Both the position numbers and the translations under genes were made by a program. Under the pieces are notes generated by a model. The model saw only the letters and a program-made list of their open reading frames with translations. It did not search any database and had not been told where the DNA came from. A stretch of DNA of 64,000 nt from Kudoa neothunni (lineage: Eukaryota; Animalia; Cnidaria), in the NCBI GenBank assembly GCA_964304625.1, contig OZ199838.1:16971469-17035468 (forward strand). The letters run 5' to 3'. This document shows positions 10,939 through 47,882 of this stretch, piece by piece; position 1 is the stretch's first letter; every line of letters begins with the position of its first letter.

Positions 10939-13675
10939 GGTAATGGTAAAGTATGTGACTCCAGAAAAACGCCATCTTCCGCACGTTTTTTCCCGTTTTT
11001 TCTTTTACGATTATCAATAATAAATTAAAAGGATATCGAGTGCAAATTAATTACTTCTAAATTTTTGCCTAATTCCCATTAGGCAACAGTCGGATACACG
11101 TGTAATCTACATCGTTTTGCAATGAACACCGGAAAATAGCTTATTATTTGCTTATTTCACAAATTATCCAAAATTTATATTTTATATTATTTTTATTAGC
11201 AACGGTATTAAATTTTCCTGCATTTGTTTATCACGCGGAAACGGCTATAATGGAGCTTTTAAGTTTTAGAGGGGACGATGATTTTTTTTGCTTAATTAAT
11301 GACTATGATAGTTTTTTTACACCTTATTATCAAGGGGCTATCTAAAAGCTGCCCCTGAAAGATGTTTTAAGTGTTGGAATTATAAAACTTTCGTTTTAAA
11401 AAAGAGAAAAATAAATGTAAGGAGACCAATGACCGTTGCTTCGTATTACGATAGAAACAACATTGATTACTCCTTCACTTACAACTGTAAAAAGTACTGA
11501 TCTTCTGTGAAATAACGACTTAATGTAATTAAGATGTAAAACTAGCGTTTCCCCTCGAAATGGTACCTTTTTCTCTATGGGCTCCGTTACCTCAACGACA
11601 AAATTAACTATAAAAAAATATTTAAAATACTCTATTATTGGTCGATGGACAATACCATCATGTCGACCTGTAAGATGATAAATATTTCCAAACCTACCAC
11701 TTCTTCATGGTTTTACAAGATTAGAAAAATATACATATCGAGTTTTGATTTTGAGGAGCGGCAAAAATTTGGTGGAGAAGATTACATCATTGAAATAGAT
11801 GAGACTCTTCTCCACGGCAAGAGGAAGAATAATGGGGGGGGGGGGAGATACTTAAAAGGGGACAAGTGGAAAGTTTCATCGGATAAAGAATTTATTGTAC
11901 CGAGTAGTAATTTCTATCAACTCAGATTCTTGCCACTTCCACTGACTATATTTTAATGCAACAGGAAATGATGATATGAGTGATGGCGAATATTCGCCAT
12001 CCGAGGTCGAATTTTCGGATGAAACTATTGATGGTTGTTTATCACAATATTTTGCCTCTTAAATGAAATAGGAGACACGAGAAAGAGACGGGAGAGATAC
12101 GGAGATCGTGTAGACGGCCCTTGGGTTTTCGGACTTTGTCTTTGCAAGATATGCGACGATGGGAAAAGGCAACTCATGGAAGTCCGTTATGTCTACGTTC
12201 AGAAAAGAGACCGGGGAACTCTTATTCCAATCATCCAAAATGAGGTTCTTAAAGGATCTACCATTTGTAGTGATGAATGGAGAGTCTATAGTAACCTGAA
12301 TTCACTTGGTTACAGTCATATAAAAATTAATCATTCAATTGAATATGTCAGGGACGGTTCCCATACAAACACCATAGAAGCTTGTTGGGGGAGACCTAAA
12401 ACAAAGTTTCTCCGAATTAAACGGGGTGTTTCATTCAATAATTTGTCCGAATATTTGTGCGAAGAACAGTTCCAATCAATTATGGGAGAAAAATTTCAAC
12501 TCTTAAATAATATACTAACAAAAATTATGTTACCGTACTAATGTAGTTATTAATAAGTCTATCACATTTTATTTATATGCGTTTTTATTTGTTGTATTTA
12601 ATGTAATAAATGTCAGAGGACGTGTAATTAGAAATTTTATACTAGAAGTTAGATATGTAAATAATAAATTTTTTGTGTTAAATTTTTCGAGTAAAAATAA
12701 ATCAGGTTAATTGTAATTTATTTTAAACGAATACATTTGATAGTTCCATTCACTGGAATATTAAAATTGGGAGAAAATATTAGTGAATAAAATAAATATT
12801 CATATAGAAAGTGCTATATTAATATTAGTAAGAAAAATTGAACGTATGGATTTTCATACAACTGGTCATAAGTTCAATATATTGAATAACACTTCAACTG
12901 CGCGTTCATAGCACAGTAGTTGTTGCAAAGAATAATGTTGACATAAAAAATAAACTAAAATTATAAATTATTTATTTTCAAAGCTAAATTTTATTTTTGT
13001 CAAAATAAAAAAATTAGTAATGTAAATAAACTTAATACTTTAGGTCGTATTAAATAAAGAAATAAAAAAATGCGCGATTTATTATTTCTAAAATTTTTAT
13101 AATTTAATATTTTTAAATAAACTAAATACATATTAAAATATTTGTTATTAATGTCTTTCTTCAATTTTGTAGCCAAAAATATCAATATACGATTAATATA
13201 ATTATTGTCAGTTCCAATTTCGCGAGTAATTGGTGTATACAAATTTTTTCACTAATAACAATGTACAAATAAAAATTTATAGACAATTATAGATGTGACT
13301 AAATGTTTGAAAAGTTAATTTGACATTTAGGAATAAAGATAGATGACACAATATTTCTTAATATTAGATAAGCTTATTTAGAAGGTTTACTAGGCTAAAT
13401 TTGGTATGCAAAGATTAAGAAAATTTAAATAATGGTTATAATGTATTAATCAGGATAAAACATGCAAATAATAAGCTATTTTCTGATGTTTATTGCAAAA
13501 TGATGTAGATTACACGTGTATCCGACTGTTGCCTAATGGGAATTAGGCAAAAATTTAGAAGTAATTAATTTGCACTCGATATCCTTTTAATTTATTATTG
13601 ATAATCGTAAAAGAAAAAACTGGAAAAACGCGCGGAAGATGGCGTTTTTCTGGAGTCACATACTTTACCATTACC
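10939..13675 (+). mobile_element. Merlin (IS1016/IS1595-like) DNA transposon with ~213-bp TIRs
   Basis: Long inverted repeats at 10939-11151 and 13464-13675, starting GGTAATGGTAAAG, enclose a Merlin-type transposase. Confidence 0.92.
11250..12541 (+). pseudogene. Merlin transposase, intron-containing, frameshifted at the 5' end
   Basis: Motifs IEIDET, GKRK, WVFG, SDEWR.Y, INHS, HTNTIE. Predicted introns 11907-11964 and 12034-12071 join the two track ORFs in frame, and 11494-11533 restores CKKC. An A7 run near 11612 and upstream lesions break the frame. Confidence 0.85.
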
Positions 13676-15304: not shown

Positions 15305-18300
15305 ATGAAAAATATCTCAAGATATTTGTTTGGTAACGTTAGTTGTTCATTTTCCTTCAATGATTGTTTTTCCTAGTTTTTGTAATCTTAATTACAATAA
15401 AAGATATTCCTGGTGCTCACCTAGCACATAGCATATGCGATCAATATGACGAAAGGAGGACAAATTATTTACAAACACACAAGGAACTTTCTGATCTAAA
15501 TACAAATTATGCGACAACAATAGAAATAGCTGAACCATTGATACAAAATTTAGAATCTAACAGCGCAGAATATCCTCGCGAGAAAATCGACTCAATGTTA
15601 AGTTTGAAATATGCCAATATTAAATTGGGAATATATCCAATATACGAGATAGATCCATTTGAACAACTGGGTATAAATTTGTTGACAACCGGACGTCCCA
15701 CGTTCCTCAAGATTCAAAGGGCTGGTATATGCTATTCAAGTTTATTGAGCGCAAAAAGCTTTATGTTTTTGTTAAAATCCGCAAATAAGGAAACTAATGA
15801 TTTCTTAAAGTCAACAAACGAAACTCATATAAATGTATTGAAAAATGATAAAAGCAAATGTAATGCAGCAACTACCAGAGACGAATTTTCAAAATATGTC
15901 ACATATATGGATGATAACAAATCTAAAATCGCCAAGCATTTTGAAGAGCTAAAAAAATATAAAACGAAACTGTACAGTTGCAATTATGATCCTTTGGAAA
16001 AGATTATAAACCTAAAACCGATCAAAGATAGTTTTATTGATCCTTTCTATCAAGCCATGTTTAAGGAAATGATACCTTATTTTAAAGGACTCAAAGCCAA
16101 ACTGGAAAATATTGTGAACACTTTCGATGCGTACAAACAATATGTAAAAAATTTTGATAGTCATGAAAATACAATAAAAAACATGAAATTTTCTGATTAT
16201 CATGTTAACAAAAACGACGTAGAAGCACAAACTCTGCTTAGAAATACAGAAGCTTTGTTCAGCTCCACTAATGGGTATTTGTCTTCGGAACTACGGAGTA
16301 CATTGGCGACAAAAATCAGCGATTTACGTCGACAATTGGCTTTAGCTGAAACGCAGAATAATTCGATTGTTACATATGAGGAAAAAATAAAAAGAATTAC
16401 TAACAACATAATTGAGTTGAAAAAAATTATTCCAAGCGTTATTCAAGAATTAGAACCGGTAAAAAAACAAGCGGCAGAATTCATACCTAGAATTGATAAA
16501 CAGCAATCAACCATGGACATCAAAGACTATGTTTTTGAACGCAAAGAGTTGGACTCGGAGATATACGACTTTTTACAGGTTAATGAAAAATTGCTTACTG
16601 AGTGTTTAGTAGTGAAAAATGAAAAGATCGATAGATTGATCTCGGAGATCAGCAGCAGTATGTCAGAACTCGAATCAATCGATACTCATCAGTTGTCTAC
16701 AACACAGGGGAGTTATGCTTCAAAATATGAACAAATTAAATCCGTCGTTGACAAATTAAGTAAGACTGATATTCCTGCTTATGAGGAAAAATTGAAAAAA
16801 GAACATATGGACCAACTTGACGTTGAAAATCAATTTATTAAATTAACGCAAATGGGCGAGAAGAAACAGAGCTTGTTGGCCACCCTGACTTCTAAAGAAG
16901 CTAGCCTCGATGCTGATTTACTCACCACACTAACTAGGGATTTAACTACCGCTAGTGACAAATTAAACAAAGTAACGGTCAATAATAACAACTTCCAAAG
17001 ACTTCTAACATCACAAAAATCTATGCTGCTTTCGCCCAATGGAGAGAAACTGCACAAAATTTTCTCGACCCATGTCGATAAATCCATGGATGAAATCAAC
17101 TCAACACTTGCTAAGATTATTGAATTGCAAGCAAAAATCAATAATATTAAAGAAAATATTGACACCAACCGCAATGGTTTAAATCAGTTTGATCAAATAA
17201 AACTAAAAATTAGCAGTGATCATGCAGCAATTCAAAGTGCCAAAACAGAACTATCAAAGCATCTTGGTAAACGATACAAAGAATTTAAATCTTTGTTTGA
17301 TAGAAATACCAATACTGTAAATTTGAACATTGCCGATGAAATTTCAGAGGTTAATACATCAATTGATGGTTACAAAAATGCTGTTGACTCCATAGAAAAG
17401 AGTATTGATGAAATTAATGGCGAATTAAACGATTTAAGGTCTGCAGTTAATATCGCTGTAAAAAAAACTAGCAATATTGAAAGCACACATTCAGGTATGG
17501 TTGAATCCCTCACTCTTGGTTTGAAAACAGTCAAAAGCTTGGATGATGCTAAATATACACAATTGAAAAAGAAACTTAGTGAAAAATTAGACGAATATAA
17601 GAAAGAATTTAAACAACAAAATGATAACCAAACTAATGAAAAAAGTCACTATTCAACATCGGTCACTAATGCTGAAAATTTGATTAAGAGAATCCAAGAC
17701 ATTAATGAGAATAAGCAGTTGAAAGAGCTTATCGAGGATGAATTGTCAGTGGAAAATAACCTCGGCAGCATAAAACAGTTAATCGACGCACATGGACAAT
17801 TGGTTTCAACTGGTGAATCTAATCTGTATAAGCTTGAAAATGATTATATTAAACATTCGACCAGTTATGATGAAGAAAAAAAGACTTATGATAAAAATTA
17901 TAAAGCTATTCAAGATCTTCTAAATGCTTATGATAAATATGAAAACGACGATTCGCACTTCTTAAACGATTCATTGGTCAACGACTTATTGAATGTTAAA
18001 TCAGAACTGGAACAAAAATATAAACAATCTGAATCATCAACTGATTCAATGAACCACCACTTGGCTGATTTAAATAATATAGACAACACATTGGATAAAA
18101 ACACTAGTCAACAAATTCAAAGTGTTAAAGACGAAATGCGACGTGTTAATGGATTAAAAGAATCCATTAGAAATTATTTTTCAAGGCTTCAGTCACTAAA
18201 ACAAATTGTCGATAAAATTAACGAGGCAAAAGTAAAGCTTGGGGAAAAGAGAGAATTACTTGTTAGTTTCCAAGGATCATTGGAATCACAAAATACCCAA

Positions 18301-19185
18301 AACGAACAAATTATTTCTTCCAATGAACAAAAAATTAAAACATCTTTTGAAACAGAAAATGAATCTCTTAAGGCTGCAAAAGTTGAAATCGAAAAAACAT
18401 TCGTTAAATACGATGAGCTTCACAAAGAATTGAAAAATAAAGCAGATAAGGAAGGAACTGATGTTAACTCTCATTTGGATGAAGAGTATATAAACCTTGT
18501 AGCGAAGAAAAATGAAATTGATCGTAATATTGAAACACAACGTGAATCTATTAAAAACACTCTATCCGAAGGAATAAGACATTGTGGAATAGAGAAAACA
18601 CGACTCGAAAAAGACTATTCTAGCCAAAATACTCAGTTAAAAACATTGTTACAAAATATTGATAGCCTTCTCAACGATTATGTGTCAACTGACATTGAAA
18701 GTAATGGAATGGCTGAATTAAATGATAGATACACCTCACTTATTAAAAATGTCGATAATTTACTTGATAATCGCAAAGATCTTACAATAACTGAATTCAA
18801 CGAGGAAATCAAAGCTAATATCCACATGATGCTTCAATATTTGAAACTAACATTGCAACTGCCATCGAAAATGACAAAAAATTTTTCGCTGATTTAAAGA
18901 ATAATGAATCGGCAAAAAACGTCGAAGTCATAGCTGATAATAATGAAGACGCTGTACAAGAAACTTTAGTTTCCCCCCAAAATGATATAACTGATGACCA
19001 ACAATACAGCGCAGTTAAGGGAGAATCAAAAAATATCGTCTCAACGGATTTTTTTCAAATATATAATGGCAGGTGCTGCTATAGCAACTATTTGCTTGGC
19101 AGTTGGAGGTGCAATACTAAAGTACAGAAGTCTCAAAAAGAGAGAAATTTACAACAAATGTGAAAATATATACATTAAAGCCTAA
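15305..19185 (+). CDS. Large type I membrane surface protein, paralogue A (~1278 aa if two 1-nt indels are corrected): signal peptide, Cys head, coiled-coil stalk, TM, Tyr tail
   Basis: Exon 15305-15332 plus intron 15333-15376 gives MKNISRYLFVFVILITIK (alternative in-frame ATG at 15296). Colinear with paralogue B. A -1 shift at ~18822 and a +1 shift at ~19049-19055 separate the TM/tail from the main ORF. Confidence 0.88.
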
Positions 19186-22222: not shown

Positions 22223-23652
22223 ATCAATCACGCCATAATATCCAAGGTTACTGATAAGTAATAGTAACCACGGCATATCCATCACCATCTAATGGAAGAT
22301 TTTCGGTCAGCCTCAACCTGCATCCATATAAGCAGAAGTCAGGATGTCATAAGGTTCAATAAAATTTACCCCCGTCCGACCCTAGATAATCTGTTTAGAA
22401 ACAACCTAGTTTGCGCAGTATTTTTAAAATACCCTCGTACATCTAATTTGGTTCAACAACTATTATAATGATTAGAGGGATTGAAATCTCTGAGAAAATC
22501 TAACTCCTCAAAATGGTATGGTTTTAACCCTTTCACGCCGAATGTTGCCATATGGCAACATCGGATTGTTTTTATAATTTCTCAATGAGTATTATATTTA
22601 ACAACTAAAGCATTCAAAAAAAGTTAAATTAATCTTTATTCTTTTATCAAACGCTAAATTAGATAATTTTTAAAATTTCTTAGTTAGTAAAAATACGTCA
22701 TAAATTGAAATTTTTCAAACAATTTTATTTTTGTTTTTAAGATGCCAATAGGGCTGGGTGTGAAGGATATGTTCGATGCCTTATAGTAACAGATTTAGCA
22801 TCTTTATGGGAGATTCTGTTGAGTCGATTAAATTTTCATTTAATATTCCTATCATTTGATTTAATTTTATCGAACGTTAACAAAAATCCATCTTTTATCA
22901 AAAACGTTCCGAAAAGTGCGTGTAACCGACCAATCACATAATTATCAATCTGGAAATTTCTCAAAATTAGTATATTGTTTAGATCCAAATTCTTTAATAC
23001 AAATCTTTAAAGAATATTATATATCGAATGTACATTTGATTATTCAAAATGTGTTGATTTTTAAGAAGGGCGTAAAATCGTATGTGTGTAAAACGTGTAC
23101 AACCGGTAATTGACTGTAGAAGTAATTTTTTAAAAATTGTTGGTTAACAATAAAAAATCCAAGATCCATGACCCTAATTCTTTGATTTTGGTACTATGAT
23201 TCAAACTCTTTTTAATAGATTTACACAAAGCTGCTATGATCCTTTTCAGGTATTCGAGGGTTGATGTATACGGGGATTGGCAAAAAATATGAGTTTATCA
23301 AGGGATACGAAATTTCAAAAAGGTTGAAAACCACTGGTCTAGGTCTAGTGTCTAATGTGACATTTTAAGTTGTTGAAACGTAAACAGCAGGTTGATAGGG
23401 TTAATAGAAGATCGACAAACAACATAAAATTTTCAAGTTAATAGGGAAAGATTTAAAGTACGTATTGTTATTAAGTATCAAATAAGATGGACGTTGCTTG
23501 CGATAAACATATACATTTCCCGACTATAAAGATCGGATGGGTTCAAGGGTATGGTGTAGCCTATAAAAAACCGATTCATTTGTAAAAATAAACTTATTGA
23601 GCAGAGTAATGAATAAATTTTGAAGTTTGATGCTGATACTATCAATGACTAA

Positions 23653-25516
23653 ATGAGATTCCATGTATGTAAGGAATAAGAGCCATTGTTTTTATATAGC
23701 AAAAGGGTGTTTATTTTATCGAAAAGTATCAAACTTACATCAATTCTTATTTCTTAGGTGTAAGAATTAATCTTAAGGTTTAAAATGAGGTTGTGATGAT
23801 TCTGGTTGCTATTTTTCGACCCAATTTAATAACGCCAACGATGTTGTTATATAGAAACGTACTTATAATTAAAAATATATTTATTTTAGATTGGAGTTGC
23901 TGTGTTATTCAAGCCATTATCCACAGAAATTACCCTATATTCCCTTCAATTTGATAAAAAAAAACGATTGATGTATTCATCCGTTGTAAAGCAGACTAAA
24001 AGTTCCGATAAAATTAAAAGTTAAGAATATCTCATGATAAAAAATATTTAGCTATTGAAAACAAATTGTATTTGAAGAAAATTAGCGTTTTTATCAATAA
24101 ATGTATTACGCTGGCGATAAAATCTGATCATTTCAAGGATGTCAACAAAGAGGATATATTTATATTTTTTGTGCTTACTGACAATACTAAAATGATACTG
24201 TAGTTAATATTGATTTTTTTTACTGAATTATTATAGAAATATTGATGAACAAAAGATGGATCTATTAAAACAATCAATAGATATAGAATTGAAAGACTTC
24301 AAACAGTTGCGTCCTCACCCTCATCTTCTAGTGATGGATGAAAATCAGTTGAATATGGCGTTGTATTTTCACTCCCATTACCAATATAAGGAACAGGTTT
24401 AATTTTTGACGCTGGTTTGTTTTCTTGTCAGATCTAATAGGAAAACTTGGGGATTGTTGAAATGGGATTCACCACATTGAGAATAATGTACCCCCTGGAA
24501 AAATTGGATGAGTCTCTTAAACAGTGCTACTTTATGAATAAATACAACTCCACATTTGAAACTGCGGCCTATCCAATTTCAAAAATGTTTTCTGTTGCCT
24601 TCTCCTGCACAGGTTACAGAACAATTTACAACATGCTATCAATGTTAATAATTCAAGTGAGATTGCAATGAGTGAAAGTTATTGGGTGCACTTAATAGGA
24701 TAAAAAATATTTTATTCATATTAATTCTAACGATTCAAAAATCAGCGAATTATTTACTTCACATTATATTCATTAGAGTGGAAATTATTTAAACGCTGAT
24801 TCCAACGAGTTGCTGAATCCTTGTATTCCCGAGGGGTCGTCGTATTTCCTGAACGTGAACGAAATTCTTAACATTTGCATTAAACCTACTCACGTTGCAA
24901 CTTATTCTTCAAATTACAAGTTTTTGGGAAAGTTCGATCAAGAAGCTTGCATGAAACTACTAGATTCTGTGCATTCAACAATCCATTCTAGGGTGAAACC
25001 AGAATTCATGTTAATGGTGAATCAGATAAAGTGTGACATTATTTTTGAGCCAGAATTATCATTTTTGGTATTTTGTTTCTAATAAGTTTTTAACAATAAA
25101 ACAAATTTTTAAGTTTTTGGGATTTTTTGAATACCTGGATCAATTTGGATGGAAACACGGGGATGATATTGAGTTACTCATTAAAAATCATTGCACCGAA
25201 CCTTATCCAAGTAACGCCAACGTAAGTGAAGTTAATATCGTATATCTTATAAATAGAAATAAATCGTAGATGAAATTAATAATTAACGATTGTTTCAATC
25301 TGTTAGTTCTTCGACACACGCTGAAAATTTTACTCAAAACTGACCCTCAAAACATCATCATACCAGTACTTATTGTTGACTAATTTTTAGGTTTTTTCTT
25401 AAAATCAGATTTAATTCATTATCTATGCCTATTAGGACACTCTGATCAATATGCAAATGGGCTTAGGTTATTTTGATCCACGCATAAAGGAAGCAGACGC
25501 CAAATATTTCAAATGA
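23653..25516 (+). CDS. GDA1/CD39-family NTPDase (apyrase) homologue, predicted catalytically inactive, 456 aa, 11 exons
   Basis: Exons 23653-23664, 23700-23759, 23790-23858, 23890-24019, 24052-24199, 24237-24396, 24441-24656, 24777-25067, 25114-25221, 25270-25365, 25436-25516. All introns GT-AG; total 1371 nt with no internal stop. CD39-like segments in order: ENLGIVEMG, FSVAFSCTG, LNPCIPEG, GKFDQEAC, KNHCTEPY, DCF, LGYF. The first two exons are less certain. Confidence 0.85.
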
Positions 25517-25854
25517 ATTAAAATCTTGCTCATCCTATTCCCCACATTGATTCTTACATTATACACCGCTATCTTCCTGGCTATTTTATGTGTTGAGAAC
25601 AAAAGTTAATGAATACATTTATAGAAGTCATAATTTTTCCATTAAATCTATAACATGAAATTTGTGTGATAAATTTTTGAAGGCTTACTTCTATATTGAA
25701 GATTAAAATGTGGGGCAATGATGACTTTTTAAGTTATTTACCAAGCTACTAGGTAATATAATTCCTAATTATTTTGAAATTGAATAATAATATTTTTAAT
25801 GATTAGACTATTTATCCAACAAATAAATATTAGTAATACTTGTTTTGTTGATTA

Positions 25855-27687
25855 CAGCAGGCATCCGATTTTGCACACTTTTCTCAATCATCTTTTGACT
25901 GAATTTTTGTTTGACATCAATTAAATAATAAAGATGTCCATAACTCGTATTAAAATTGTTAGAAATGTAGAAGAGAAATATAATATAATATTTTGAAAGT
26001 TTACCCTATTTTTAACGCTAAGATAGCGACAGTAAAACATTTCCAAATTTCGAATATCGCCACCCTAAATGGGATTCTTCGTAAGAAATTAGAAATAATT
26101 TCCATCGTTAGAGAAGGATTTGCATCGACTAAAAGAAAAAAACATTCATAATGGATCAAACATTGATTCATTACGAAGGTGTTTATGATTGGATATGTTT
26201 GATTAGGGGGAACAAATAGAACCGTCGCCCCTGATATCGTAAATAAAAGAATTGAGCTTTCTGTAGAAAATAAGAAACCAGAACATGTGACAATTGGTTG
26301 GTTTAAGAGCTTTAAAAAGCGATTTAATCTAAGAAAAATTAATATCCATGTCGAATTCGCAGATATAGATTCTGTGGTTGTGAAGAATGGATTCCACAAC
26401 TTAAAGTCATGTTAAAATTATAGCTCAGATTATATATATATATATATATAGTATCGACGAATCTGCATTATTCTACTAGCAACAGAGAGATATATGCAGT
26501 TTTTAACGTTTTGATTTATTTTATCGATAAAAGTTTTGTAGTTTCATCAGAAAGAAATATAAAGAGGACAAAACAATCGATGAATCGAGTAACTATTTTA
26601 TTAGGTCTCTCAATGAGTGGTGGAATACTCGAATCACTAATAATCGACAAACACAAAATCTCTCGTTGTTTTAAGAATATTAAAAAACTTCCTGTGTCAT
26701 ATGATAAAAATAATAAATGTTGGATGAATAATGATGGATTCTTAAGATATATAACCTAGCTTAATTAATTATTTGCAAAAAGGAATACACAGGCGTTATT
26801 GTTCCTTTATAATGCATCATGTTTCTGTAGAAAAAATTTGAGCAACATAAAAATGGGGTTTCTCCGCCAAAAACTACGAGTGTTTTGCAACCTCTTGATC
26901 AGTGGATAATATATTCGTTTAAATATGCCTACGAAATAGCTATGCTTAAACGATATATTGCTCGTGTTGAAACAGGTATTGATCCCATCCCTCCGAACAT
27001 ATTAGAGGCAATGTTACTTATAGGAGACGCTTGGAATATGGTTTCTCCATAAACAATTAGAAATTGTTTAAAAAAATATTTTCCTATTGATAAATTGTCT
27101 TCTATACTACTAAGCGATGATTTAATAATAAAACATGCATCTAATAGAGAAATGAGTGATATTATATGCCCAGAGGAAATTAATAATGAAATAAAGGGGA
27201 TAATTCAAGAGGGATATGAAATTTGTTGTTTTTATGATGGCTATTCTACATTAGATTTAGATAGTAGAGATAATTTAGTGGATTCGGTTAAGGATGGTGA
27301 TGGATCTGGTGAGGAAGTGCTTGAAGGTAAATCTGAGGATACCCCTGTTCTGAATTTCAAAGAGGTTATTGATTCCATCAGCGAAATTAAAAAATCCTTT
27401 CTGAAAAACGATGTTGATCGATTAAGAATTCTTTCAAATCTTGGGAACGACGTATACGATATCATGTGGAAAAATATTAAACAATCGAAAATAACAGATT
27501 TTTTCAAATGTTAGAATATAAATATTGTCCATTTTACTATATTGCGTTTTATCTTTATATAAATATATTTTCTCAGTGATTAAGAGTTAAAATTTTACTT
27601 TTAATTGTTAAAAATATAATATTAAAATATGATGTGTGTGCGCCTTTCACGGTCCTGGAGGGATTGTGTAAAATCGATTGCCTACTG
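25855..27687 (+). mobile_element. Decayed full-length pogo/Tigger element
   Basis: TIRs CAGCAGGCATCCGATTTTGCACA and (rc) CAGTAGGCAATCGATTTTACACA, flanks TA/TG. Transposase motifs GWFKSFKKR, RVTILL, LQPLDQ, QSKITDFF, with stops. Confidence 0.88.
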
Positions 27688-28478
27688 TGTTTATATCTCT
27701 CTTAGATCTAAGGAGTAAAAAATCAAATAAATAAATTTATTATTATGAATTTCTCGAAAAAGTTATTCTCAACTAAAAAATGACAGATTTCTAAATGTTA
27801 ATTATTTTACCTAATATATAAAAAGTGTAAATAACACATATTATTAAATGGAATAAAATTATGATGCGCGTCAGAATGATACATATTTTTTTAAATTAAA
27901 AATGGCTTATATTTTGAAATCTCGCTATGAAGTAATCTGGATTGGCTGAAACATCCGATTATAGATAAATATGCAATTCTCCGAACAATCTTTAAAGCAT
28001 AGATTCCCAACCTTTATTCTATCGCGTCCTACTTTTTTTTGAAAACAATTCCGTACTCCACCTTTTTAAAATTATTGATTTTTTTTAATTAAAACTGTTT
28101 ATGAGTCTGAATAAAGCTCCGTATCATGTGAAAATCCGAAAGCAGTTCATATATACTTCTCATTAAAATTAAAATGTATTCGATCAGATCTAACTTAATT
28201 TTTCGATAGACCTTTAAAATTAATATCTTTGGTTCCTCAGTCCATCAAAAACAGCATCAAGTGGAACTCGTAGTAATCCAACCTTCATTAGAAAAGACTT
28301 TAGTGTATACGGGGTTGATGAACCGAAAATCAACAATTTAAATACAGAATTAATCGATATTATATTAGGTTTAATCAAAATAATGGGGGTGTATGATTTG
28401 AAATGAGATAATATTGCGATTAGAAGCATTCAGAATCTATTAGGATGGAGGGCATGTTAAATTTATTATAATTTTATA

Positions 28479-28560
28479 CAGTCGGATCTAGATATAAAGT
28501 GATTCGATATTGCGTCATTTTTCGCGGTCACAAAAATTACGCAATATCCAATCTCGACTG
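28479..28560. mobile_element. 82-bp Tigger-derived miniature inverted-repeat element
   Basis: TA|CAGTCG...CGACTG|TA, with internal hairpin GATATTGCGTCATTTTT...AAAAATTACGCAATATC. TIR resembles those at 9946 and 40276. Confidence 0.75.
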
Positions 28561-28879
28561 TACGCATTTGGTTGAGCATTAATTGATTCATACAAATTTT
28601 CCTGAGCGCTAGAACATTCAAATGTCCGCACACGCGCGGTCAAAGTTCAACAATGTTTTCTCGTTAATTATTCAAAAATTACTCTACAACAAATCTTCTC
28701 ATTACACGGGAATAATCAACTATTATTTTCCAATAATTTTGTTGAAAAAAACCTAGGACGTATTTACACCCCAATTTTATTCGGAAGGTGTAAACTTTCA
28801 TGTGACTTAGAGGGTTAATGGAAGAAATGTGACACGGTTTCTTTTTTTTATTTGAATAAAAAATATTCGAGTTTTTACT

Positions 28880-29480
28880 ATTAATTCCACCAAAAAACCA
28901 CTGCTCCTCTATCCTCCAACCACGATTATATTTTCTTTTGCGGAATTTTGATTAATCGAAGCCAACAACCTCTCCAGATCCTTATGACTTATTACATATG
29001 ATTGAAATACATGGTTACCTCCTATCAGTTGAGAATCAAATAGTTGATTTTCTCCGTAACGGGATCTAAATTCCATTTTCCAATCCACAAGGGTTGAGAT
29101 GGATCCTATCCGTAAATCCGATTGGATATATGCATTTTTGCACTTATACAACCAGTAGTAAATCATTAAGGGTATTGTCTACCTTGAAGAATTAAAATGT
29201 TTATTAACAAGAGTTTCATTCTTTACTTTATGTTTGAAAATTGAAACAGGGAATTTGATCTTACGGAAATGAATTTTCTATATTTTTTGTGGTTCCTTCT
29301 TCATGCAACCTTGATGAATTTCAGTTTTGACTCCTTAACAAATTTACTCGCCCTAGCAGTACGTTTTGTGTAAATGCCACTTCTGTTTTTTGTTAGGTCA
29401 AACTCCATCAGAAATTTTCTTTATCTGAATAAATTTTGTATATTTTGCTTGTATTGAACAACTTCTTCATATTTGCGCCA
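28880..29480 (-). mobile_element. Merlin transposase N-terminal remnant
   Basis: MIYYWL...ISTLVDWKMEFR...LIGG resembles the Merlin HTH region just upstream of the VEIDE motif. Confidence 0.5.
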
Positions 29481-32400
29481 TTACAACTTGTTTCATAGTA
29501 ATAACGCAACGTCGTTATCCTCAATAGAATAGCAATTCAACAGTCTTTTATATTTACGACATAAGGGTTTGATATTCTCTGTTTTATGACTTTGTGCTGT
29601 TATTTCTTTAAAATTAAATAATCTTTTGTTGAATCCTTTGAAATACACACCATTTTTGTATGTTACATTTATTTTAATATAACAATTTTATTTATGTATT
29701 ACAAACTGCGCTAAAAAATAAATAACAATGTTTATACGAAAGAAACTCATCACAAATTTAATGTTAATTAACCCTCCGTGGCACACATGGAGTCCATTGG
29801 ACCCCACGAAGAAAAATTAGATGTAAATTGTCACATACATTATTTTAATTGAATGTTTTAAAACAGTTGTCGCATATAACGTTAGAGTGTTCCTTGCAAA
29901 CCTGATTTTTGCAACTGTGACACTCTGTTCGGGTTTTTTATCGTTTTGGCGAGAACACAAATGGCAACTTTTTTGGCGATGAGATTGTTGGATTCTTGAG
30001 AAAAATTGATTTTTGGTGGTTCTGTAAAGTTTTAAATAAAATAAATTATGTTTAATCCACCGCCAATCTTTGCCTCCGGCAAACCTGACAGGCGCGTGCG
30101 CACTAGAGTTTCTTTTTATTTAGTCTTTTTGTAGGTTTAAATTATAGTTATGCAATAATAACTACGTATATCAATCAATTGTATTATAGATATTCTTATT
30201 TTTAAAATATAATTGGTGTATTATAATAGATCAGTTGGCACGTATGCATACCTTTTCTTTTCTCAATGAAATGCGTTGCTATTTGCTTTTGTGTGTTTTC
30301 AATATAAAATAAAATTCATAATCCTATTGTATAATTAGTATTTAAATCGGATATCACGTTAATGCTTAAAAACTGATGGAAAGTATGTAAATATTGTCAC
30401 TTATTTTTGGTGGCATATAAACACTGATGGCTAAAACTATCGCTTATAAGCCGGCATCATTTAGTTCTTTTATATAATATTTAAATCCAACTTACTCACC
30501 ATAATAGAAACATAAACATTAAAAATCGATCTTATAAAGTTTTTAGTTTTATTTTTTGGCATTTAGTATTATATATATGAGAGGGTGAATTTAATTTTAC
30601 CCTGAGTCTTAAGATTTAATAATAATATACGAAAGATGTTAAGGAATAAAAGTTATATACAATATATATTGTATATTTAATATGATGTAAGCATTAACAA
30701 ATGATTAACGATAATAAATAATATGATTAGAATAAAATAAAATCAATACCACAATTTTTCGATCTATTCTGTTTGCACCTAATAAAAATACGATAGTAAC
30801 ATACATGCATTTTTGGAATGTTTCCTATATTTCTTATGTTATTATTTAAGTTTATATAAACCGTATCAAGTACAATTAATAAGTAAAATTCCTCTGCATG
30901 TAACAATGTTATAATTTGTTAATTATTTCTAATCATTAAACTGCAGTTTGAATTCAACATTTACCAGCGATGAGATTTATTAAATTTTATGGGGTACAAT
31001 TTTTGAATAAATTCTTGACTATCCCCCCATAAAGTGAATTATATGGGTTAGAACAGTATGTAACCGAGTTCCTGTTATACCTTTGTCCAAAAATACTTAA
31101 AATGCAACGCGGATCAATTTTTGTAATTTTATGAACGCTTTAAGAATATATAATGTGTGATACTTTTTTGAAATTTATATCCAACTATTTATTAAAAAAT
31201 TACGTTTTTTAACTTTATTAAACATTTGAAATGTAATATTTGTGATTGTATCTAATAAATTCATTATTTTATTTAAAAAGACAGTATCAATCTCTAGGGC
31301 GGATTTATAACCTGTTTAACCATTGAATATGCCATCTTCCATCAACTCATCGTCTTTAATTTCTGTCAACAATTTATTAAATGGAGTTAATATATTAATC
31401 CCCGGCACAAATTTAAATTAATGGAAACTACTTAACTTAGTTATTACCAAATCCTGTTGAATAATTTAGAAATTTTCAAAGAAAAATTCATTATTTCTTA
31501 AACTTATATTTTTTCTAATTTAATCAACTATATTAACACATTCTTTAGAAGCTAAATATTTTCATCATTTGAGTCAAAAAAGTTGCCTGATTACATATTA
31601 GTTATAAATTATTTATGTTACGGTTAACACCAAAAAATTGATAATGAATCAAATATTATTTGTTTTGAGTTAAAAAGATAAATCGAGATTTAAAACCTGG
31701 AAAAAAAAACATTTTTACGAATACGAATAAATTAAGTTTACAATTTGCTAACCTTACCACCATTTATATTTATGGGAATAGTCATTTTTTGATGAACCTT
31801 TTGGGAGATTATTTCTATTTTATAAAGGTAAGCCAATTTTATAAGATACAGTTATATCTTCTATCTTTCTCAATACAGCAGCCAAAAAAATGCATGGGAA
31901 TGGAAAATAAAGGAACTGAAGCAGAATCTACAATTCTGATCTGTAAATTTTAAAAAGGTCTATCATTCCATCGATAATTTTAATTTATATATTCGTTTCC
32001 ATTTCCTAACATATAGAATATATAAAAATATGCCAGATTAATTAATAAATATGTATGTATATGTGCGGAATTTTAAAATTGAATGTAATATATAGTTTAA
32101 AGACAAAAATTGAGTTTTTTGGGTAATTATAAATTTATTTGTTTGACATGTAATTAATTTTGATCATGCTTAAGGTATTTATATTAACCCTACAAATACT
32201 TAAAATAATATCTATGTGTATGTGTAGTTGTTTGTAAAATTCAATTTGTAGATAGATGATTAAAGTATTATCCTGAAATAAAACACAGGAAACTAATATA
32301 ATCGCCATATAAAAAATTTATTAACTAAAATAAAATTATTTCATTGCAACTACAAGAATACAGATTTATATACGTACGCTAAAAGTAAAAAACCCCTAAT

Positions 32401-33289: not shown

Positions 33290-34687
33290 CCAGTTATATT
33301 CTTTGGAAATAGCCTGAACGAAGAATGTATCGTAATATCGATGGTAACTCTCACATAAAGCTTTCAACTTATCCATTTTTAATTTAACATCTTTACTCCG
33401 AGGATCATTATTAGGATTGCATAAATAAAACATGGCTTCTTGTTCAACTGAGCTTTGTCGCTCGTAAATTTTTAATAAAAGTTAGTAGACCTGAATGTGC
33501 TTGATCAAACCTAGCATAAAAATGTCGATGGAAACTTTCTGCATTATTGGAGGTTAGAGGTATGTCATTAAGGGTTCGAGAATGAGCGTTCCATGATTCA
33601 ACAGTGTATTTGTTACTATTAATGAAGTTCTTCTCAAAATAACTTAGGAATAGATTCAAATTCTTTATTTCAATTTTCTTGGCTTGTAGAAGTAATTTTT
33701 CAAATTCTATCTTCACGCAATCTTTCGGCACAAAGGCTAACGAAGTAACGCACTTGACAAAAAGTTTAAACTCAATATCTTCCTGATAAAACTTTGATAG
33801 ACCCAATTTATGCAATCTTCGATTAACGCATTGGCCAAGATGGGACAAGCAGAAGAACACATTATGTTTTGTTTCTTTTTTAAATGCATTATACGCGGCA
33901 ACCTCAAAATCTATGATAATGTTGGGAAGTTCCAGGTTTCCTTTCTCTCTTATAATTTGAATAATACGGTCATAGCTGCTCTCCGACCTATCTGTCATTA
34001 AAATAAACACCAACGGTAATATTTTGTTAAAAACGTGACCATGAATGGTGTACATTTGGGAGAACGTTCCGTCGCAAACCCAGAATTTGGAATGTTTCAG
34101 GTGCGAAAGATTTTCTTCTGTTGTAAAAATAATAATTCTATTGCTATCCTCGGATCCAGAATCGTATATACAAAAATTTTTGTTCCTTAAGGTCACTATC
34201 GATCCGCAAAGATTTGTCTCAGGATTTACATCAATACTCTTTCGTTTTCGTATATCTCGAATCACCTGATAAACGGACTTTTTTGGAATATTTGGACATC
34301 TTCTTGATTAGTTGCAATATCATACACTTTATTAGTTGGATATACAGTATTTTCTGCGATATGCTTGATTTTATCCTTGAAAAATTGTTTGTTTTTTTTC
34401 TTCCTCGGATACTAAGTGACTATGAAAACCTAGCGTATCCAACCTCTCTATCTGTTCTGTCAGAAATGTTCTTAACCTACCTTTACATCCTCGTTTTTGA
34501 CACCTCCAATACTGACAAACTTTTGTTTTATAATCTTTATTATAAAAACCCATTATAAAAAATATCTTTTTTCGTCTTGGTAATAATAAAATCAGCACTA
34601 ATTTCTTGGTTCATGATTTTATACGCGCGCCGATGATTATATACGAGAAAACGCGCATGCGCGACTCCGGCAAAACTTGGGCGTCCC
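33290..34687 (-). mobile_element. Decayed MULE element with FLYWCH-like domain
   Basis: YWRCQKRGCKGRL (FLYWCH-like), WVCDGTF, QMYTIHG, IDFE.AAYNA, CLSHLGQC, TSNNAESFH. GC-rich terminus ending GGGCGTCCC at 34687. Confidence 0.88.
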
Positions 34688-36355
34688 TAAGTTGTTGGCA
34701 AGTAAACTATATCGTACGATGGCATCCTTATTATCCACAGAGTCAATCTTATTTTTGACTGTACGCATCGAGACATTCCACACTCAACCCTGCTTTCGAT
34801 TAGACTGTTCACATGGACGGACAATATGTATGCACAATTCATCGAATCATTCATCGCTACGACGAACTAGGCGAATACCAGAGAGTAGAGTTGTGGAAAC
34901 AACAATATGGCCTGAGTGTGATTTAGAATCACAGTGAATGCATATTTCAAATCGAAATCCACTTGCTTCTATTTCTTCTCAGGAGTCACACCAACACTCA
35001 CAACGTAATTGCCGACGAGCAAAGAGAACGAAGACGAGAAGAAAATAGAGTAAGAAATAGAAATCGACGTGTATGTGAGACGACTCAACAGAGTCCTGCA
35101 GTGTCACCTATAAATGAACACAACACAGGATCAGACAGTAAATTTGTACCTGAACCTTATTACACTCCTGTTCTATTAGGTCAACAAACGCGAAGTATGC
35201 CTGATGATACTTGGAATATGGTCGCTTTGCATTACGAACGTTGCTACAACATGAAAATGAAACGAATATTACAATTTGGAAAATGTCGAAAATTTGTCCA
35301 AAATGCCGCGCTAAGAAGTGGATAAACGAATTTTCGGGTATGTGTTGTTCCGGCGGTAATGTTATTTTGGACACACTACCTGATTCATCTCATTTTCTAT
35401 GAAGACTCCGGAATTTCAAGACACTTTCTACAAAATATCCGAAAATACAACTTCACTTTCCAGATGACATCTTTTGGAGCGAACGTAATTTGTAGGAACA
35501 GATTCATGCCTACTTTACTTTTAAGGTTCACGGTCGAATGTGTCATCGAATTGAATCGCTATTGACTTCTGAAAATGAGGAACGAAATTCTTGCGATTAT
35601 ATTTCGTACAAAACATGTATTTTCAAGCTCAAAATCGATCCAATATGTATCTCTAGCATAGGCATAATATTATTTTAGCGCTTCAAGATATGTATGTTAC
35701 ACAGACACACTAGCTACATCCACAGTTTTAGGCATGACTTAGAAATGCACCCGTCTTCTGATTTTGATATAATTATAAACTCTGATAAGCTTCCACAGGG
35801 AGAAAATGAGAGAAAATACAACTCTCCAACTTGAAATGAGGTGGCCATCGCAATGACGGATGAGCAGCATTGACGAAGGATATTGTTTTGAGGAGTACAA
35901 ACAACAAACTTCAGAGGATAAGCGAAACACACAGATCGCATTATGTATTGCAATATCCATTAACTAATGTCTATGGTCAAGATGATTACCATTTTTGTAT
36001 TTCACAAATTGACGCAAACAAAAGTGTTTCATGTCAGAATTTTTATTCTCTCCATTTTATGGAAACGGAAAAGAATTTTAACACGCATCATCACTTTAGG
36101 ACATTATTCCAACAATATGCTGTAGATATGTTTGTGAAGAGGGAATCAGAGAGACTTTGTTTTATCAGAGCGAAACAAGATGAACTTCGTATTGAATCTT
36201 ACATCAATTTAATTGATAGCATTAGTAGCAACGGTGAAATAAATGGGCGGGGACGGTTGTATACTTTGCCATCGACTTTCGCTTTCGTAGGTTCACCACG
36301 CTATATAAACGAGAGGATGCAGCTTGCCATGACCTACGTTTGATGTTTTGGAGGA
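34688..36355 (+). mobile_element. Truncated Helitron copy 1 (N-terminal part of RepHel)
   Basis: CPKCRAKKW...CCSGG zinc motif, FLQNIRKYN, LQYPL, LFQQYAVDMF, LPSTF..GSPRY. Inverted homologue of 53600-55160 and 60654-60733. Confidence 0.9.
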
Positions 36356-46900: not shown

Positions 46901-47882
46901 AGATATAAGTCGTTGATGATAAATCACTTTGTGTTTTTGTTAGCAAACTTTCAATTTCATCTTCTTTGTCAATAGGCACGCTCCCAATCTTCAAATTATT
47001 TAGAATTGAAGTGAAATTTTTATAATTATTCAAATAATTTTCAAACAATTCTTGATTGTACTGTGTGATAAAAGATTGCATCTCAGATTTGATGTTTTCA
47101 AAGTATGGAACCATTGCCTCTGTCATTTTAGTATAGAAAGGGTCCATTATTTCATTTCTTTCTTTTATTACCTGAGTTAACTTAATTGTGGGATCAACAA
47201 GGCAGTATTTTTTGTTATATCTATAATTGTCTAAACTTTGTCGGTAATTTTTCATTGTTTGTATGGAATTTGGCATGTCTTTAATTGAAGTTAGCATATC
47301 GAATCCTAATTTATAAGAATAACAATCATTATAATCAGTAGCATTCACATCTTGATAAAATTTGAGCTGTGCATTTAAAAATTGTACAGCTTTATCATGC
47401 TCCTCTTGATATTTATTTGTGGAGTGGCATGCATTCTTGAATTGTTTGAAATCTCCGGCGGCCGTATGTAAACGTGACAAATTATCTCTACATAATCTCT
47501 CCATTGGCTTTTCGGTAACATATTGTTTAAATGGTTCTACTTCATAGATTTCATACGCTTGAACAAGCAAGAACAGTTCTTTTCGCAACAAATTATCTAT
47601 TTTCTCGTCAGTATAACGAAGCATGTGAGATTTGTATTTTTCCCTTGCGTTTTGAAGGGTTTTCACCATTATTTGAGATCTTTTAGTTTCTTCGTTCAAC
47701 ATATTGTATTTTTGTATATAGTCTTGCCTTAATTTATCATAGATTTCACACGTGGACACATTTTCATAGTTTATTGTAGGAGTAGTGGAATAAGATGACA
47801 ATGTCATCAACAACACGGAGTCTATGCAACTAATTAGTCAATCTAAATAATAATAGTTTTTACATATTAGTTGATTGAACAT
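43995..47882 (-). CDS. Large type I membrane surface protein, paralogue B (1281 aa), intact
   Basis: Exon 47882-47864 plus intron 47863-47822 gives MFNQLIYSVLLMTLSSYS. Single long second exon. TM IVAGAAVALVAMAIAGAVI, tail RYRSVKKNEIYEKCENIYIKA. Confidence 0.92.

What the first reader, a model, noticed from the sequence alone, without database searches (positions are those of the whole stretch)
23653..25516. Intact CD39-like NTPDase gene in which all five apyrase-conserved regions are degenerate (candidate pseudo-enzyme)
Seen: 11 exons splice to a stop-free 456-aa frame that the ORF track shows only as fragments. Against recalled CD39 motifs: ACR1 YGIVLDAGSSHT becomes IGVAVLFKPLST; ACR2 YLGATAGMR becomes FFVLTDNTK; ACR3 ITGQEEGAYGW becomes MDENQLNMALY (catalytic Glu lost); ACR4 GALDLGGASTQ becomes GIVEMGFTTLR; ACR5 AGWTLGY becomes MQMGLGY. 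Most scaffold Cys positions persist (KCI, FSCTG, NPC, ICIK, EAC, KCD, HC, DCF). There is an N-terminal hydrophobic anchor but no C-terminal TM. Known: the DXG motifs of ACR1/ACR4 and the ACR3 Glu are required for hydrolysis, and parasite ecto-NTPDases modulate host purinergic signalling. Inference: an open frame across ten introns amid decayed DNA implies selection for a non-catalytic role (binding, decoy or structural).
Basis: partly seen in the sequence, partly recalled or inferred. Interest (0 to 1): 0.82.

Follow-up and report, generated by a model that had tools for sequence, protein, structure and literature searches.

The report
Truncated copy of a dead apyrase
This is a recently duplicated, probably decaying copy of a gene family in a small animal genome (other agents of this scan say a myxozoan fish parasite; not tested here) that evolved from an ATP-degrading surface enzyme (CD39/apyrase) and has lost that enzyme's catalytic loops; the family is interesting, this particular copy is not intact.

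Summary
The gene is real but less intact than described. A GT-AG model of 9 exons (23796-25516, 430 codons) is stop-free.

Two paralogues (C2:11.90 Mb, 97% identical; C1:16.67 Mb, about 80%) keep every exon length and splice site. They encode 469 and 478 aa, with an N-terminal hydrophobic segment and a C-terminal membrane helix. Only the window copy has a 13-bp deletion that frameshifts the ancestral ATG, and a CGA>TGA stop just before that helix. It is probably a young decaying or truncated copy, inside a 7-kb segmental duplication in transposon-rich DNA.

NTPDase ancestry holds, but only through family profiles and a paralogue:
- Profiles of exons 5, 6 and 8 map colinearly on apyrases (P 1e-4 to 4e-3).
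- PDB searches with the exon-6 and exon-8 profiles give NTPDases first (best E 0.004).
- Fragment models rank NTPDases first.
- An in-genome NTPDase with intact ACR1/ACR4 has the same nine-exon layout.

Single exons of this copy hit nothing.

ACR1, ACR2 and ACR5 are degenerate, ACR4 keeps Glu-x-Gly, and the ACR3 Glu is ambiguous. The profile marks 51 places; the scan had already noted the family elsewhere in this genome. There is no RNA evidence. Joined-protein searches and folds were left out by rule.

The parts
22710..29771 (.). About 7-kb segmental duplication shared with contig C2 (11902022-11909040), 93-97% identical; it contains the gene.
   Evidence: megablast of the window against 40 kb of C2
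23785..23796 (+). Ancestral start codon (ATG 23785-23787), now followed by a 13-bp deletion (after 23789) that puts it out of frame. It reads ATG AGG TTG TGA, and the TGA overlaps the next ATG.
   Evidence: three-way DNA alignment with paralogues L005 and L006, both of which have the 13 bases and an open frame from this ATG
23796..23858 (+). Exon 1 as usable in this copy (internal ATG, 21 codons). It is the remnant of an 87-nt first exon that encodes the N-terminal hydrophobic segment.
   Evidence: hydropathy
23890..24019 (+). Exon 2 (phase 0 to 1). It starts with the ACR1 remnant (23890-23925), in which the DxGS..T phosphate loop is replaced.
   Evidence: same exon start, phase and near-same length as exon 2 of the NTPDase paralogue L003
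24052..24199 (+). Exon 3 (148 nt, phase 1 to 2). It ends with the ACR2 remnant (24165-24191).
   Evidence: L003 exon 3 is also 148 nt with the same phases
24237..24396 (+). Exon 4 (phase 2 to 0), with the ACR3 remnant (24334-24366).
24441..24656 (+). Exon 5. It starts with the ACR4 remnant (24450-24482, Glu-x-Gly kept) and holds the family-invariant Cys.
   Evidence: hhalign of family profiles A2/A4 against apyrases, P 0.0018/0.0043 at ACR4; local alignment to L003 exon 5, p=0.005; fragment model ranks NTPDases first
24777..25067 (+). Exon 6, the Cys-rich part of domain II (Pro-Cys motif and two further invariant Cys).
   Evidence: family profile against PDB gives only NTPDase1/2, E=0.0039; hhalign P=1.3e-4; profile built without this subfamily scores this exon 45.7 bits; local alignment to L003 exon 6, p=0.0007
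25114..25221 (+). Exon 7.
   Evidence: equivalent exon start in L003
25270..25365 (+). Exon 8, the Cys-Phe helix that precedes ACR5.
   Evidence: family profile A6: hhalign P=0.0019 at the matching apyrase helix; PDB hits are only Legionella NTPDase I, E=0.22; local alignment to L003 exon 8, p=0.03
25436..25516 (+). Exon 9 as truncated in this copy: ACR5 remnant (25451-25471) and a premature TGA (25514-25516) where both paralogues have CGA.
25517..25609 (+). Orphaned in-frame tail that still encodes the C-terminal membrane helix, plus the ancestral stop codon.
   Evidence: frame translation; paralogues read through it; hydropathy 2.47 over 19 residues

Best explanation
The stretch holds one copy of a three-member subfamily. 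That subfamily belongs to a large gene family, found so far only in this genome (its exon-6 profile marks 51 places), that descends from a CD39-type NTPDase (ecto-apyrase).

A paralogue elsewhere in the genome (C1 near 0.885 Mb) still has canonical phosphate-binding loops and the same nine-exon structure. In this subfamily ACR1, ACR2 and ACR5 are rewritten and ACR4 is reduced to Glu-x-Gly, so nucleotide hydrolysis is very unlikely (inferred from known NTPDase mechanism). The cysteine scaffold, exon structure and reading frame have been kept under moderate purifying selection (shown for the subfamily).

The two intact paralogues encode 469 and 478 aa: an N-terminal hydrophobic segment, an NTPDase-fold body and a C-terminal membrane helix. 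Their most likely role is a non-catalytic surface protein, for binding or as a coat (inferred).

The window copy is a recent segmental duplicate, about 3% diverged. It has lost the ancestral start through a 13-bp frameshifting deletion, and the C-terminal anchor through a nonsense change. Most likely it is an early pseudogene. At best it makes an anchor-less 430-aa product from an internal ATG.

Sub-odds: NTPDase-derived and non-catalytic about 0.8; this copy decaying about 0.55-0.6.
For: Gene model and selection:
- 9 GT-AG exons, stop-free.
- Paralogues keep all exon lengths and splice sites; 0 of 20 indel events fall in exons.
- dN/dS is 0.33-0.51.

Copy-specific lesions:
- The 13-bp deletion and the CGA>TGA change are absent from both paralogues.
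- The window lineage has 8 non-synonymous to 2 synonymous changes.
- The copy lies in a 7-kb duplication in transposon-rich DNA.

NTPDase ancestry:
- Exon-6 family profile against all PDB sequences returns only NTPDase1/2, E=0.0039, with three Cys aligned (with 29 sequences gives E=0.026).
- hhalign against a plant apyrase alignment: exon 5 at ACR4 (P 0.0018/0.0043), exon 6 (P 0.0011/1.3e-4), exon 8 (P 0.0019). The three are colinear at template columns 225-279, 296-366 and 428-448.
- Exon-8 profile against PDB returns only Legionella NTPDase I.
- Fragment AlphaFold models of exons 6 and 5 rank NTPDases first in Foldseek.
- The exon-6 profile finds the NTPDase paralogue L003 genome-wide at E=2.4e-5.
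- L003 exons hit PF01150, and L003 has nine exons with the same phases and near-identical lengths.
- Exon-by-exon local alignment of the window copy to L003 gives Fisher P=2.8e-4, with a clean mismatched-pair control.
- This copy belongs to the family even when its subfamily is left out of the profile: exon 6 scores 45.7 bits.
Against: - No exon of this copy alone hits PF01150 or any NTPDase in the PDB.
- The N-terminal half (exons 2-4, ACR1-3) has no statistical link to NTPDases (p 0.19-0.66). It is placed only by shared intron positions and motif-level resemblance.
- Foldseek E-values are above 0.1, and the exon-6 model has low confidence (pLDDT 59.9).
- No RNA data, so neither the junctions nor the silence of this copy is shown.
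- The two lesions rest on one assembly.
- The lineage-specific substitution counts are too small to be significant.
- A very short upstream frame whose stop overlaps the ATG could still allow translation from 23796.
- Loss of activity is inferred, not assayed.
Confidence: 0.6

Rival explanations
1. The window copy is functional in a new form. It is translated from the internal ATG at 23796 and ends before the helix, giving a soluble or secreted, anchor-less pseudo-apyrase, for example a shed decoy, rather than a pseudogene.
For: All 430 internal codons are open, and all splice sites are intact. The three-codon upstream frame ends in a TGA that overlaps the ATG, which could permit re-initiation. 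Both lesions remove anchors rather than the body.
Against: The remaining N-terminal hydrophobic run is only about 6-7 residues, which is poor for entry into the secretory pathway. A disulfide-rich ectodomain left in the cytosol is unlikely to fold. The window lineage has 8 non-synonymous to 2 synonymous changes. The copy is a young duplicate in transposon-rich DNA. There is no RNA evidence.
Confidence: 0.15
2. The two lesions are assembly or sequencing errors, or rare alleles. The copy is really an intact two-anchor membrane pseudo-apyrase like its twin on C2.
For: Both lesions rest on one assembly. The two copies are 97% identical, which invites mis-polishing between them.
Against: A 13-bp deletion and a clean C>T change are not typical consensus errors. 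DNA contigs of the source sample hold 95% of the sampled words of the stretch. Other indels between the two copies exist in the neighbouring non-coding DNA.
Confidence: 0.1
3. The gene is an unrelated lineage-specific cysteine-rich membrane protein, and the apyrase resemblance is chance.
For: No Pfam hit for any exon. Single-exon PDB searches give chance hits only. A search of 1.84 billion representatives with exon 6 found only spurious repeat matches.
Against: Three independent exon profiles map colinearly on apyrases. NTPDases are the first PDB hits for two of them: the only hits at E up to 10 for A1 and A6, and the first five of six for A5. The nine-exon layout and intron phases are the same as in an NTPDase paralogue. 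Fragment folds rank NTPDases first.
Confidence: 0.05
4. The protein is still an active apyrase with unusual motifs.
For: ACR4 keeps Glu-x-Gly, and a glutamate stands near the ACR3 position.
Against: The ACR1 phosphate loop has lost its Asp, Gly and Ser. ACR2 and ACR5 are rewritten (alignment anchored on shared intron positions with L003). From established NTPDase mechanism, both DxG loops are needed.
Confidence: 0.03

Closest known systems
Cell-surface NTPDases of the GDA1/CD39 family (rat NTPDase1, PDB 3ZX0/3ZX3; NTPDase2, 3CJ1)
   Same: Best and nearly only PDB matches of the exon-6 family profile, with three cysteines aligned. Top Foldseek ranks for the exon-5 and exon-6 fragment models. 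Similar size. In the intact paralogues, a hydrophobic segment at the N-terminus and a membrane helix at the C-terminus.
   Different: No PF01150 hit exon by exon. The ACR1 phosphate loop, ACR2 and ACR5 are rewritten, and ACR4 is reduced to Glu-x-Gly. This copy lacks both anchors.
In-genome NTPDase paralogue at C1:884130-887228 (locus L003)
   Same: Nine exons with the same intron phases and near-identical lengths: 133/148/166/204/285/99/93 nt against 130/148/160/216/291/108/96 nt. Exons 5, 6 and 8 are significantly similar. It is found by the pseudo-family exon-6 profile at E=2.4e-5.
   Different: L003 keeps canonical ACR1 (Asp-Ala-Gly-Ser-Thr-Gly-Thr-Arg), ACR4 (Asp-Ile-Gly-Gly-Ser-Ser) and an ACR5 Trp-Thr-Leu-Gly, and its exons hit PF01150. 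It is probably an active enzyme.
Other members of the same dead-apyrase family in this genome (for example C3:10.34-10.37 Mb and C2:5.83-5.88 Mb; earlier scan finding s1-701620)
   Same: Shared exon-5 and exon-6 layout; invariant Pro-Cys and two further Cys; the Cys-Phe helix of exon 8.
   Different: At least some have a Ser/Thr/Pro-rich stalk before a single C-terminal helix. Their ACR4 hairpin is fully rewritten. The window subfamily is only 15-25% identical to them in exon 6 and is the closest of the 29 aligned copies to a canonical ACR4.
ENTPD5/mt-PCPH, a truncated catalytically inactive NTPDase (PMC3829800)
   Same: A member of the NTPDase family that is reported to be inactive after truncation by a frame change (title and abstracts listed).
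   Different: That is a somatic or oncogenic mutant of one mammalian enzyme, not an expanded germline family with rewritten motifs.

Membership tests
GDA1/CD39 nucleoside phosphatase family (Pfam PF01150) | Match to the PF01150 profile above its gathering score | tested here: not met
   Exon-wise hmmscan of nine pieces gave no PF01150 hit at E up to 10. A six-frame PF01150 scan of the whole genome hits only two other loci, not the window. The joined protein was not scanned.
GDA1/CD39 nucleoside phosphatase family (Pfam PF01150) | Remote homology to bona fide NTPDases over colinear regions | tested here: met
   Family profiles of exons 5, 6 and 8 align colinearly to an apyrase alignment, P 1.3e-4 to 4.3e-3. 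The PDB hits of the exon-6 and exon-8 profiles are NTPDases. This holds for the C-terminal half only; exons 2-4 are not significant.
GDA1/CD39 nucleoside phosphatase family (Pfam PF01150) | ACR1 and ACR4 phosphate-binding loops (Asp-x-Gly motifs) | tested here: not met
   ACR1 position reads Leu-Phe-Lys-Pro-Leu-Ser-Thr in place of Asp-Ala-Gly-Ser-x-x-Thr (alignment anchored on the shared exon start with L003). ACR4 keeps Glu-x-Gly, but the second Gly is Phe.
GDA1/CD39 nucleoside phosphatase family (Pfam PF01150) | Catalytic glutamate of ACR3 | tested here: inconclusive
   An ungapped alignment anchored on the exon-4 end puts Leu at that position. A Glu invariant in the three paralogues lies three residues upstream. 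Exon 4 has no significant alignment.
GDA1/CD39 nucleoside phosphatase family (Pfam PF01150) | Two-domain actin-like ATPase fold | tested here: inconclusive
   Only exon fragments could be folded. The exon-5 model (pLDDT 74.6) and the exon-6 model (pLDDT 59.9) rank NTPDases first in Foldseek, but with E 0.16-1.6. The full-length fold was left out.
Cell-surface (CD39-type) NTPDases | Conserved ectodomain cysteines | tested here: met
   The three invariant Cys of exon 6 align with Cys of rat NTPDase1. The window copy has 9 Cys; the intact paralogues have 10, one of them in the C-terminal helix tail.
Cell-surface (CD39-type) NTPDases | Hydrophobic anchors at both termini | tested here: not met
   Present in paralogues L005 and L006. 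In the window copy the N-terminal segment is shortened and the C-terminal helix lies behind a premature stop.
Dead-apyrase family of this genome | Match to the family exon profiles built without this subfamily, and shared exon layout | tested here: met
   Exon 6 scores 45.7 bits, 0 of 2000 shuffles as good; exon 8 p=0.006; exon 5 p=0.04. All 30 fetched loci have adjacent exon-5 and exon-6 equivalents.

The most novel reading that the evidence does not exclude
The family whose exon-6 profile marks 51 places in this genome is an unreported expansion of membrane-anchored CD39-fold pseudo-enzymes. It would serve the organism as a variable surface coat or as nucleotide- or ligand-binding decoys. 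The three-member window subfamily, which keeps a hydrophobic segment at each end and the nearest-to-canonical ACR4, would be the evolutionary intermediate between the active NTPDase paralogue and the copies with a stalk and a single membrane helix. The window copy would then be a newly made soluble form rather than a pseudogene.
Probability: 0.15. Interest if true: 0.75.

Novelty: new variant of a known kind. Interest (0 to 1): 0.45.

Why it matters
Ecto-NTPDases are known tools by which parasites damp host purinergic danger signalling. A large family that keeps the NTPDase scaffold, cysteines and membrane anchoring but has discarded the catalytic loops would be a clear case of an enzyme fold recruited for a non-catalytic surface role. 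It would also be a candidate antigen or binding family in a poorly understood genome.

I found no report of such a family, neither in the two myxozoan genome papers I checked for these terms nor in one search for inactive NTPDases.

For this window the practical message is narrower. The copy here should not be used as the reference member. The intact twin on C2 (11.90 Mb) and the probably active paralogue on C1 (0.885 Mb) are the ones to study.

Tried and rejected
- Pfam scan of every exon piece gave nothing. The PF01150 six-frame scan of the genome does not touch the window.
- The search of 1.84 billion protein representatives with exon 6 gave two hits. Both are chance matches to a Cys-containing repeat in long repeat proteins; one carries Listeria-Bacteroides repeats.
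- The ESM Atlas feature search with exon 6 gave no usable hit.
- RNA evidence: three raw-read RNA runs and one RNA contig set laid 0 reads on 23300-25800. By the tool's own wording this is no test.
- The canonical nematode SL1 leader is absent, so my first guess of a nematode was dropped.
- HSP70 as a taxonomic probe gave best hits of 75-78% to many animals. The organism is a metazoan without a close relative in the collection, and nothing finer can be said.
- Iterative profile searches started from the three-member subfamily did not reach other family members for any of exons 2-5 and 7-9. A profile of a distant subgroup's exon 4 does not score the window's exon 4.
- hhalign of three-sequence profiles of exons 1-4 against apyrases gave no meaningful hit.
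- Single-exon phmmer against the PDB gave chance hits or none.
- In scripts, exons of the window copy, its two paralogues and L003 were joined only to check reading frames, to compute dN/dS and to count cysteines.
Full report
**What is in the sequence.** The region 23.4-25.8 kb is AT-rich (about 30% G+C) and reads as short open pieces separated by short stop-rich spacers. Joining the pieces at GT..AG sites gives nine exons:

| Exon | Window coordinates |
|---|---|
| 1 | 23796-23858 |
| 2 | 23890-24019 |
| 3 | 24052-24199 |
| 4 | 24237-24396 |
| 5 | 24441-24656 |
| 6 | 24777-25067 |
| 7 | 25114-25221 |
| 8 | 25270-25365 |
| 9 | 25436-25516 |

The result is a stop-free frame of 430 codons that ends in TGA. 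The two extra 5' exons from 23653 are not. That stretch is no better conserved than introns, one of the joins would need an intron of about 12 nt against 31-120 nt for the eight introns of the model, and the paralogues show a simpler start (below).

**Paralogues show the model is real.** A search of the window's own genome (40.26 Mb, 4 contigs) with exon 6 found two close copies: C2:11.90 Mb (92% protein identity in that exon) and C1:16.67 Mb (68%). It also found nine weak ones.
- The two close copies align with the window over the whole 2.6 kb.
- All nine exons have identical lengths, with no internal stop, and every GT and AG is kept.
- Against the more distant copy, 20 indel events fall in the 1308 non-exonic bases and none in the 1293 exonic ones (P about 1e-6).
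- dN/dS between the window or its twin and the third copy is 0.33-0.51.

The frame has therefore been under moderate purifying selection in this subfamily.

**This copy is damaged at both ends.** Both paralogues open with an ATG at the position of window 23785 and encode a hydrophobic N-terminus. The window lacks 13 bases right after it, so that ATG now reads ATG AGG TTG TGA. Only the internal ATG at 23796 is in frame, and the hydrophobic run is shortened.

At the 3' end both paralogues have CGA where the window has TGA (25514-25516). They read on for about 30-40 more codons through a strongly hydrophobic helix. The window still carries that helix in frame behind its stop, at 25517-25606.

The paralogues give complete frames of 469 and 478 aa; the window copy gives 430. 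The outgroup copy shows that both changes are derived in the window lineage. That lineage also has 8 non-synonymous and 2 synonymous changes, against 4 and 3 in the twin. This is suggestive, but the numbers are too small to be significant.

The copy lies in a duplication of about 7 kb (window 22710-29771 = C2:11902022-11909040, 93-97% identity). The window lies 119-183 kb from the end of contig C1, and the C2 twin lies about 135 kb from the end of C2 (contig lengths). The surrounding DNA is full of transposon remains: an ISXO2-like transposase, MULE, Helitron, and retroelement integrase and reverse transcriptase.

**Is it NTPDase-derived?** Direct tests on this copy alone are negative.
- No exon hits PF01150 or anything else in Pfam.
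- PF01150 run over the genome in six frames hits two other loci only.
- Single exons find no NTPDase in the PDB.
- Exon 6 finds only chance repeat matches among 1.84 billion representatives.

The link appears once relatives are used.

1. *Family size.* The weak own-genome hits are a real family. A profile of exon 6 from 12 loci finds 51 places in the genome, and all 30 fetched loci also have the exon-5 equivalent directly upstream. A profile built without the window's subfamily scores the window's exon 6 at 45.7 bits, with 0 of 2000 shuffles as good. Exon 8 gives p=0.006 and exon 5 p=0.04.
2. *PDB searches.* The exon-6 profile contains no recognised NTPDase. Searched against all 177,635 PDB sequences, it returns only rat NTPDase1 (E=0.0039) and NTPDase2, with the three invariant cysteines aligned. 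The 29-sequence version gives NTPDase1 at E=0.026 and NTPDase2 at 0.44 as the first five of six hits; the sixth is an unrelated protein at E=0.89.
3. *Profile-profile comparison with 17 apyrases*:

| Exon | Apyrase region matched | Template columns | P |
|---|---|---|---|
| 5 | ACR4 | 225-279 | 0.0018 and 0.0043 |
| 6 | Asp-Pro-Cys ... Cys region | 296-366 | 0.0011 and 1.3e-4 |
| 8 | Cys-Phe helix before ACR5 | 428-448 | 0.0019 |

   The three placements are in the right order. The 32-column exon-8 profile finds only Legionella NTPDase I in the PDB (E=0.22).
4. *Fragment folds.* AlphaFold models of single exons were built by reference from the family alignments.
   - The exon-6 model (pLDDT 59.9) has NTPDase1 at Foldseek ranks 1-9 and NTPDase2 at ranks 11-14.
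   - For the exon-5 model (pLDDT 74.6), about 35 of the top 48 rows are NTPDases of six kinds.
   - All E-values lie between 0.16 and 1.6, so only the ranking counts, not the scores.
5. *An NTPDase paralogue with the same gene structure.*
   - Locus L003 (C1:0.885 Mb) has canonical ACR1 and ACR4, and two of its exons hit PF01150 colinearly. The pseudo-family profile finds it at E=2.4e-5.
   - Its gene model has nine GT-AG exons of 81/133/148/166/204/285/99/93/at least 138 nt.
   - The window subfamily has 87/130/148/160/216/291/108/96/171 nt, with identical intron phases.
   - Exon-by-exon local alignment of the window copy to L003 gives p=0.005 (exon 5), 0.0007 (exon 6) and 0.03 (exon 8). Fisher P is 2.8e-4, and only 1 of 56 mismatched exon pairs exceeds z=2.

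Taken together, descent from a CD39-type NTPDase is well supported for the C-terminal half. For the N-terminal half it rests on the shared exon structure.

**State of the catalytic motifs.** Exon 2 starts at the same position and phase in the window copy and in L003. Read from that shared start, the ACR1 loop Asp-Ala-Gly-Ser-Thr-Gly-Thr-Arg of L003 corresponds to Leu-Phe-Lys-Pro-Leu-Ser-Thr-Glu here. The flanking strand pattern is kept and the loop is gone.

| Motif | State in the window copy |
|---|---|
| ACR1 | Asp, Gly and Ser of the loop replaced; flanking strands kept |
| ACR2 | Keeps one Thr, and Lys in place of Arg |
| ACR4 | Least changed: Glu-Met-Gly-Phe-Thr-Thr against Glu-Leu-Gly-Gly-Ala-Ser of plant apyrases |
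| ACR5 | Keeps Leu-Gly-Tyr |

From the established NTPDase mechanism, in which both Asp-x-Gly loops hold the phosphates, hydrolysis is very unlikely. This is inference, not an assay.

**What it most likely is.** The subfamily encodes a non-catalytic NTPDase-fold protein with a hydrophobic segment at each end. The wider family includes copies with a Ser/Thr/Pro-rich stalk and a single helix. It is scattered in clusters, for example C3:10.34-10.37 and 10.84-10.87 Mb and C2:5.83-5.88 Mb. The window copy is a young duplicate that has lost both anchors. I take it to be an early pseudogene (about 0.55-0.6). The alternatives are a new anchor-less product (about 0.15) and lesions that are errors of the assembly (about 0.1).

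**Context and limits.** Other agents of this scan had already described the same family at other places in this genome and call the organism a myxozoan, probably *Kudoa neothunni*. I did not test the species. My HSP70 probe shows only an animal without close relatives in the collection. They estimated about 20 copies; my profile search marks 51 places.

I found no mention of apyrase, NTPDase, CD39 or GDA1 in the two myxozoan genome papers I checked, and one report of an inactive truncated NTPDase in mammals.

No RNA reads could be laid.

In scripts, exons of the window copy, its two paralogues and L003 were joined only to check frames, to compute dN/dS and to count cysteines.

Noticed in passing
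G000:C1:884130-887228 (locus L003, minus strand): A probably active CD39-type NTPDase gene. It has nine GT-AG exons, canonical ACR1, ACR4 and ACR5, an N-terminal hydrophobic segment and a C-terminal helix, and the same intron phases as the dead family. It is the likely living relative of the family's ancestor.
   Followed up: partly
whole genome, for example C3:10.34-10.37 Mb, C3:10.84-10.87 Mb, C3:3.02-3.05 Mb, C2:5.83-5.88 Mb, C2:7.50-7.62 Mb: The exon-6 profile of the dead-apyrase family finds 51 places, often in local clusters and several near contig ends. This is more than the 'about 20' noted earlier in the scan.
   Followed up: partly
window 15364-18897 (+) and 43995-47816 (-): Two very long single open frames (1177 and 1273 aa) with no Pfam match. 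They lie in stretches of strong AT skew (+0.14 to +0.20 and -0.20 to -0.24).
   Followed up: partly
window 12035-12541, 33444-34265, 35870-36343, 53595-53987, 56121-57026, 57756-58163: Transposon remains of several classes: an ISXO2-like DDE transposase, a MULE transposase (weak, below Pfam's cut-off), two Helitron N-terminal domains, and a retroelement integrase zinc-binding domain and reverse transcriptase. The window is transposon-rich DNA 119-183 kb from the end of contig C1.
   Followed up: partly
window 25610-29771: The 7-kb duplication shared with C2 runs about 4 kb past the gene. That part holds open frames at 26001-26399 (-) and 27095-27514 (+) without a Pfam match. What else was copied is unknown.
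   Followed up: partly
G000:C1:5121614-5123425, C2:624257-626074, C1:2234013-2235785: Three HSP70 genes, each matched end to end by PF00012 within a single open frame of 660-690 codons and so apparently intron-less, in a genome where the genes studied here have many short introns.
   Followed up: no
G000:C2:7278507-7279569 (locus L001): A second, canonical NTPDase (PF01150, 119 bits) with a different gene structure: one 239-codon open stretch spans ACR2 to ACR4. Its best relatives in the protein collection are two unnamed proteins from assembled sequencing runs, at 52-53% identity.
   Followed up: partly
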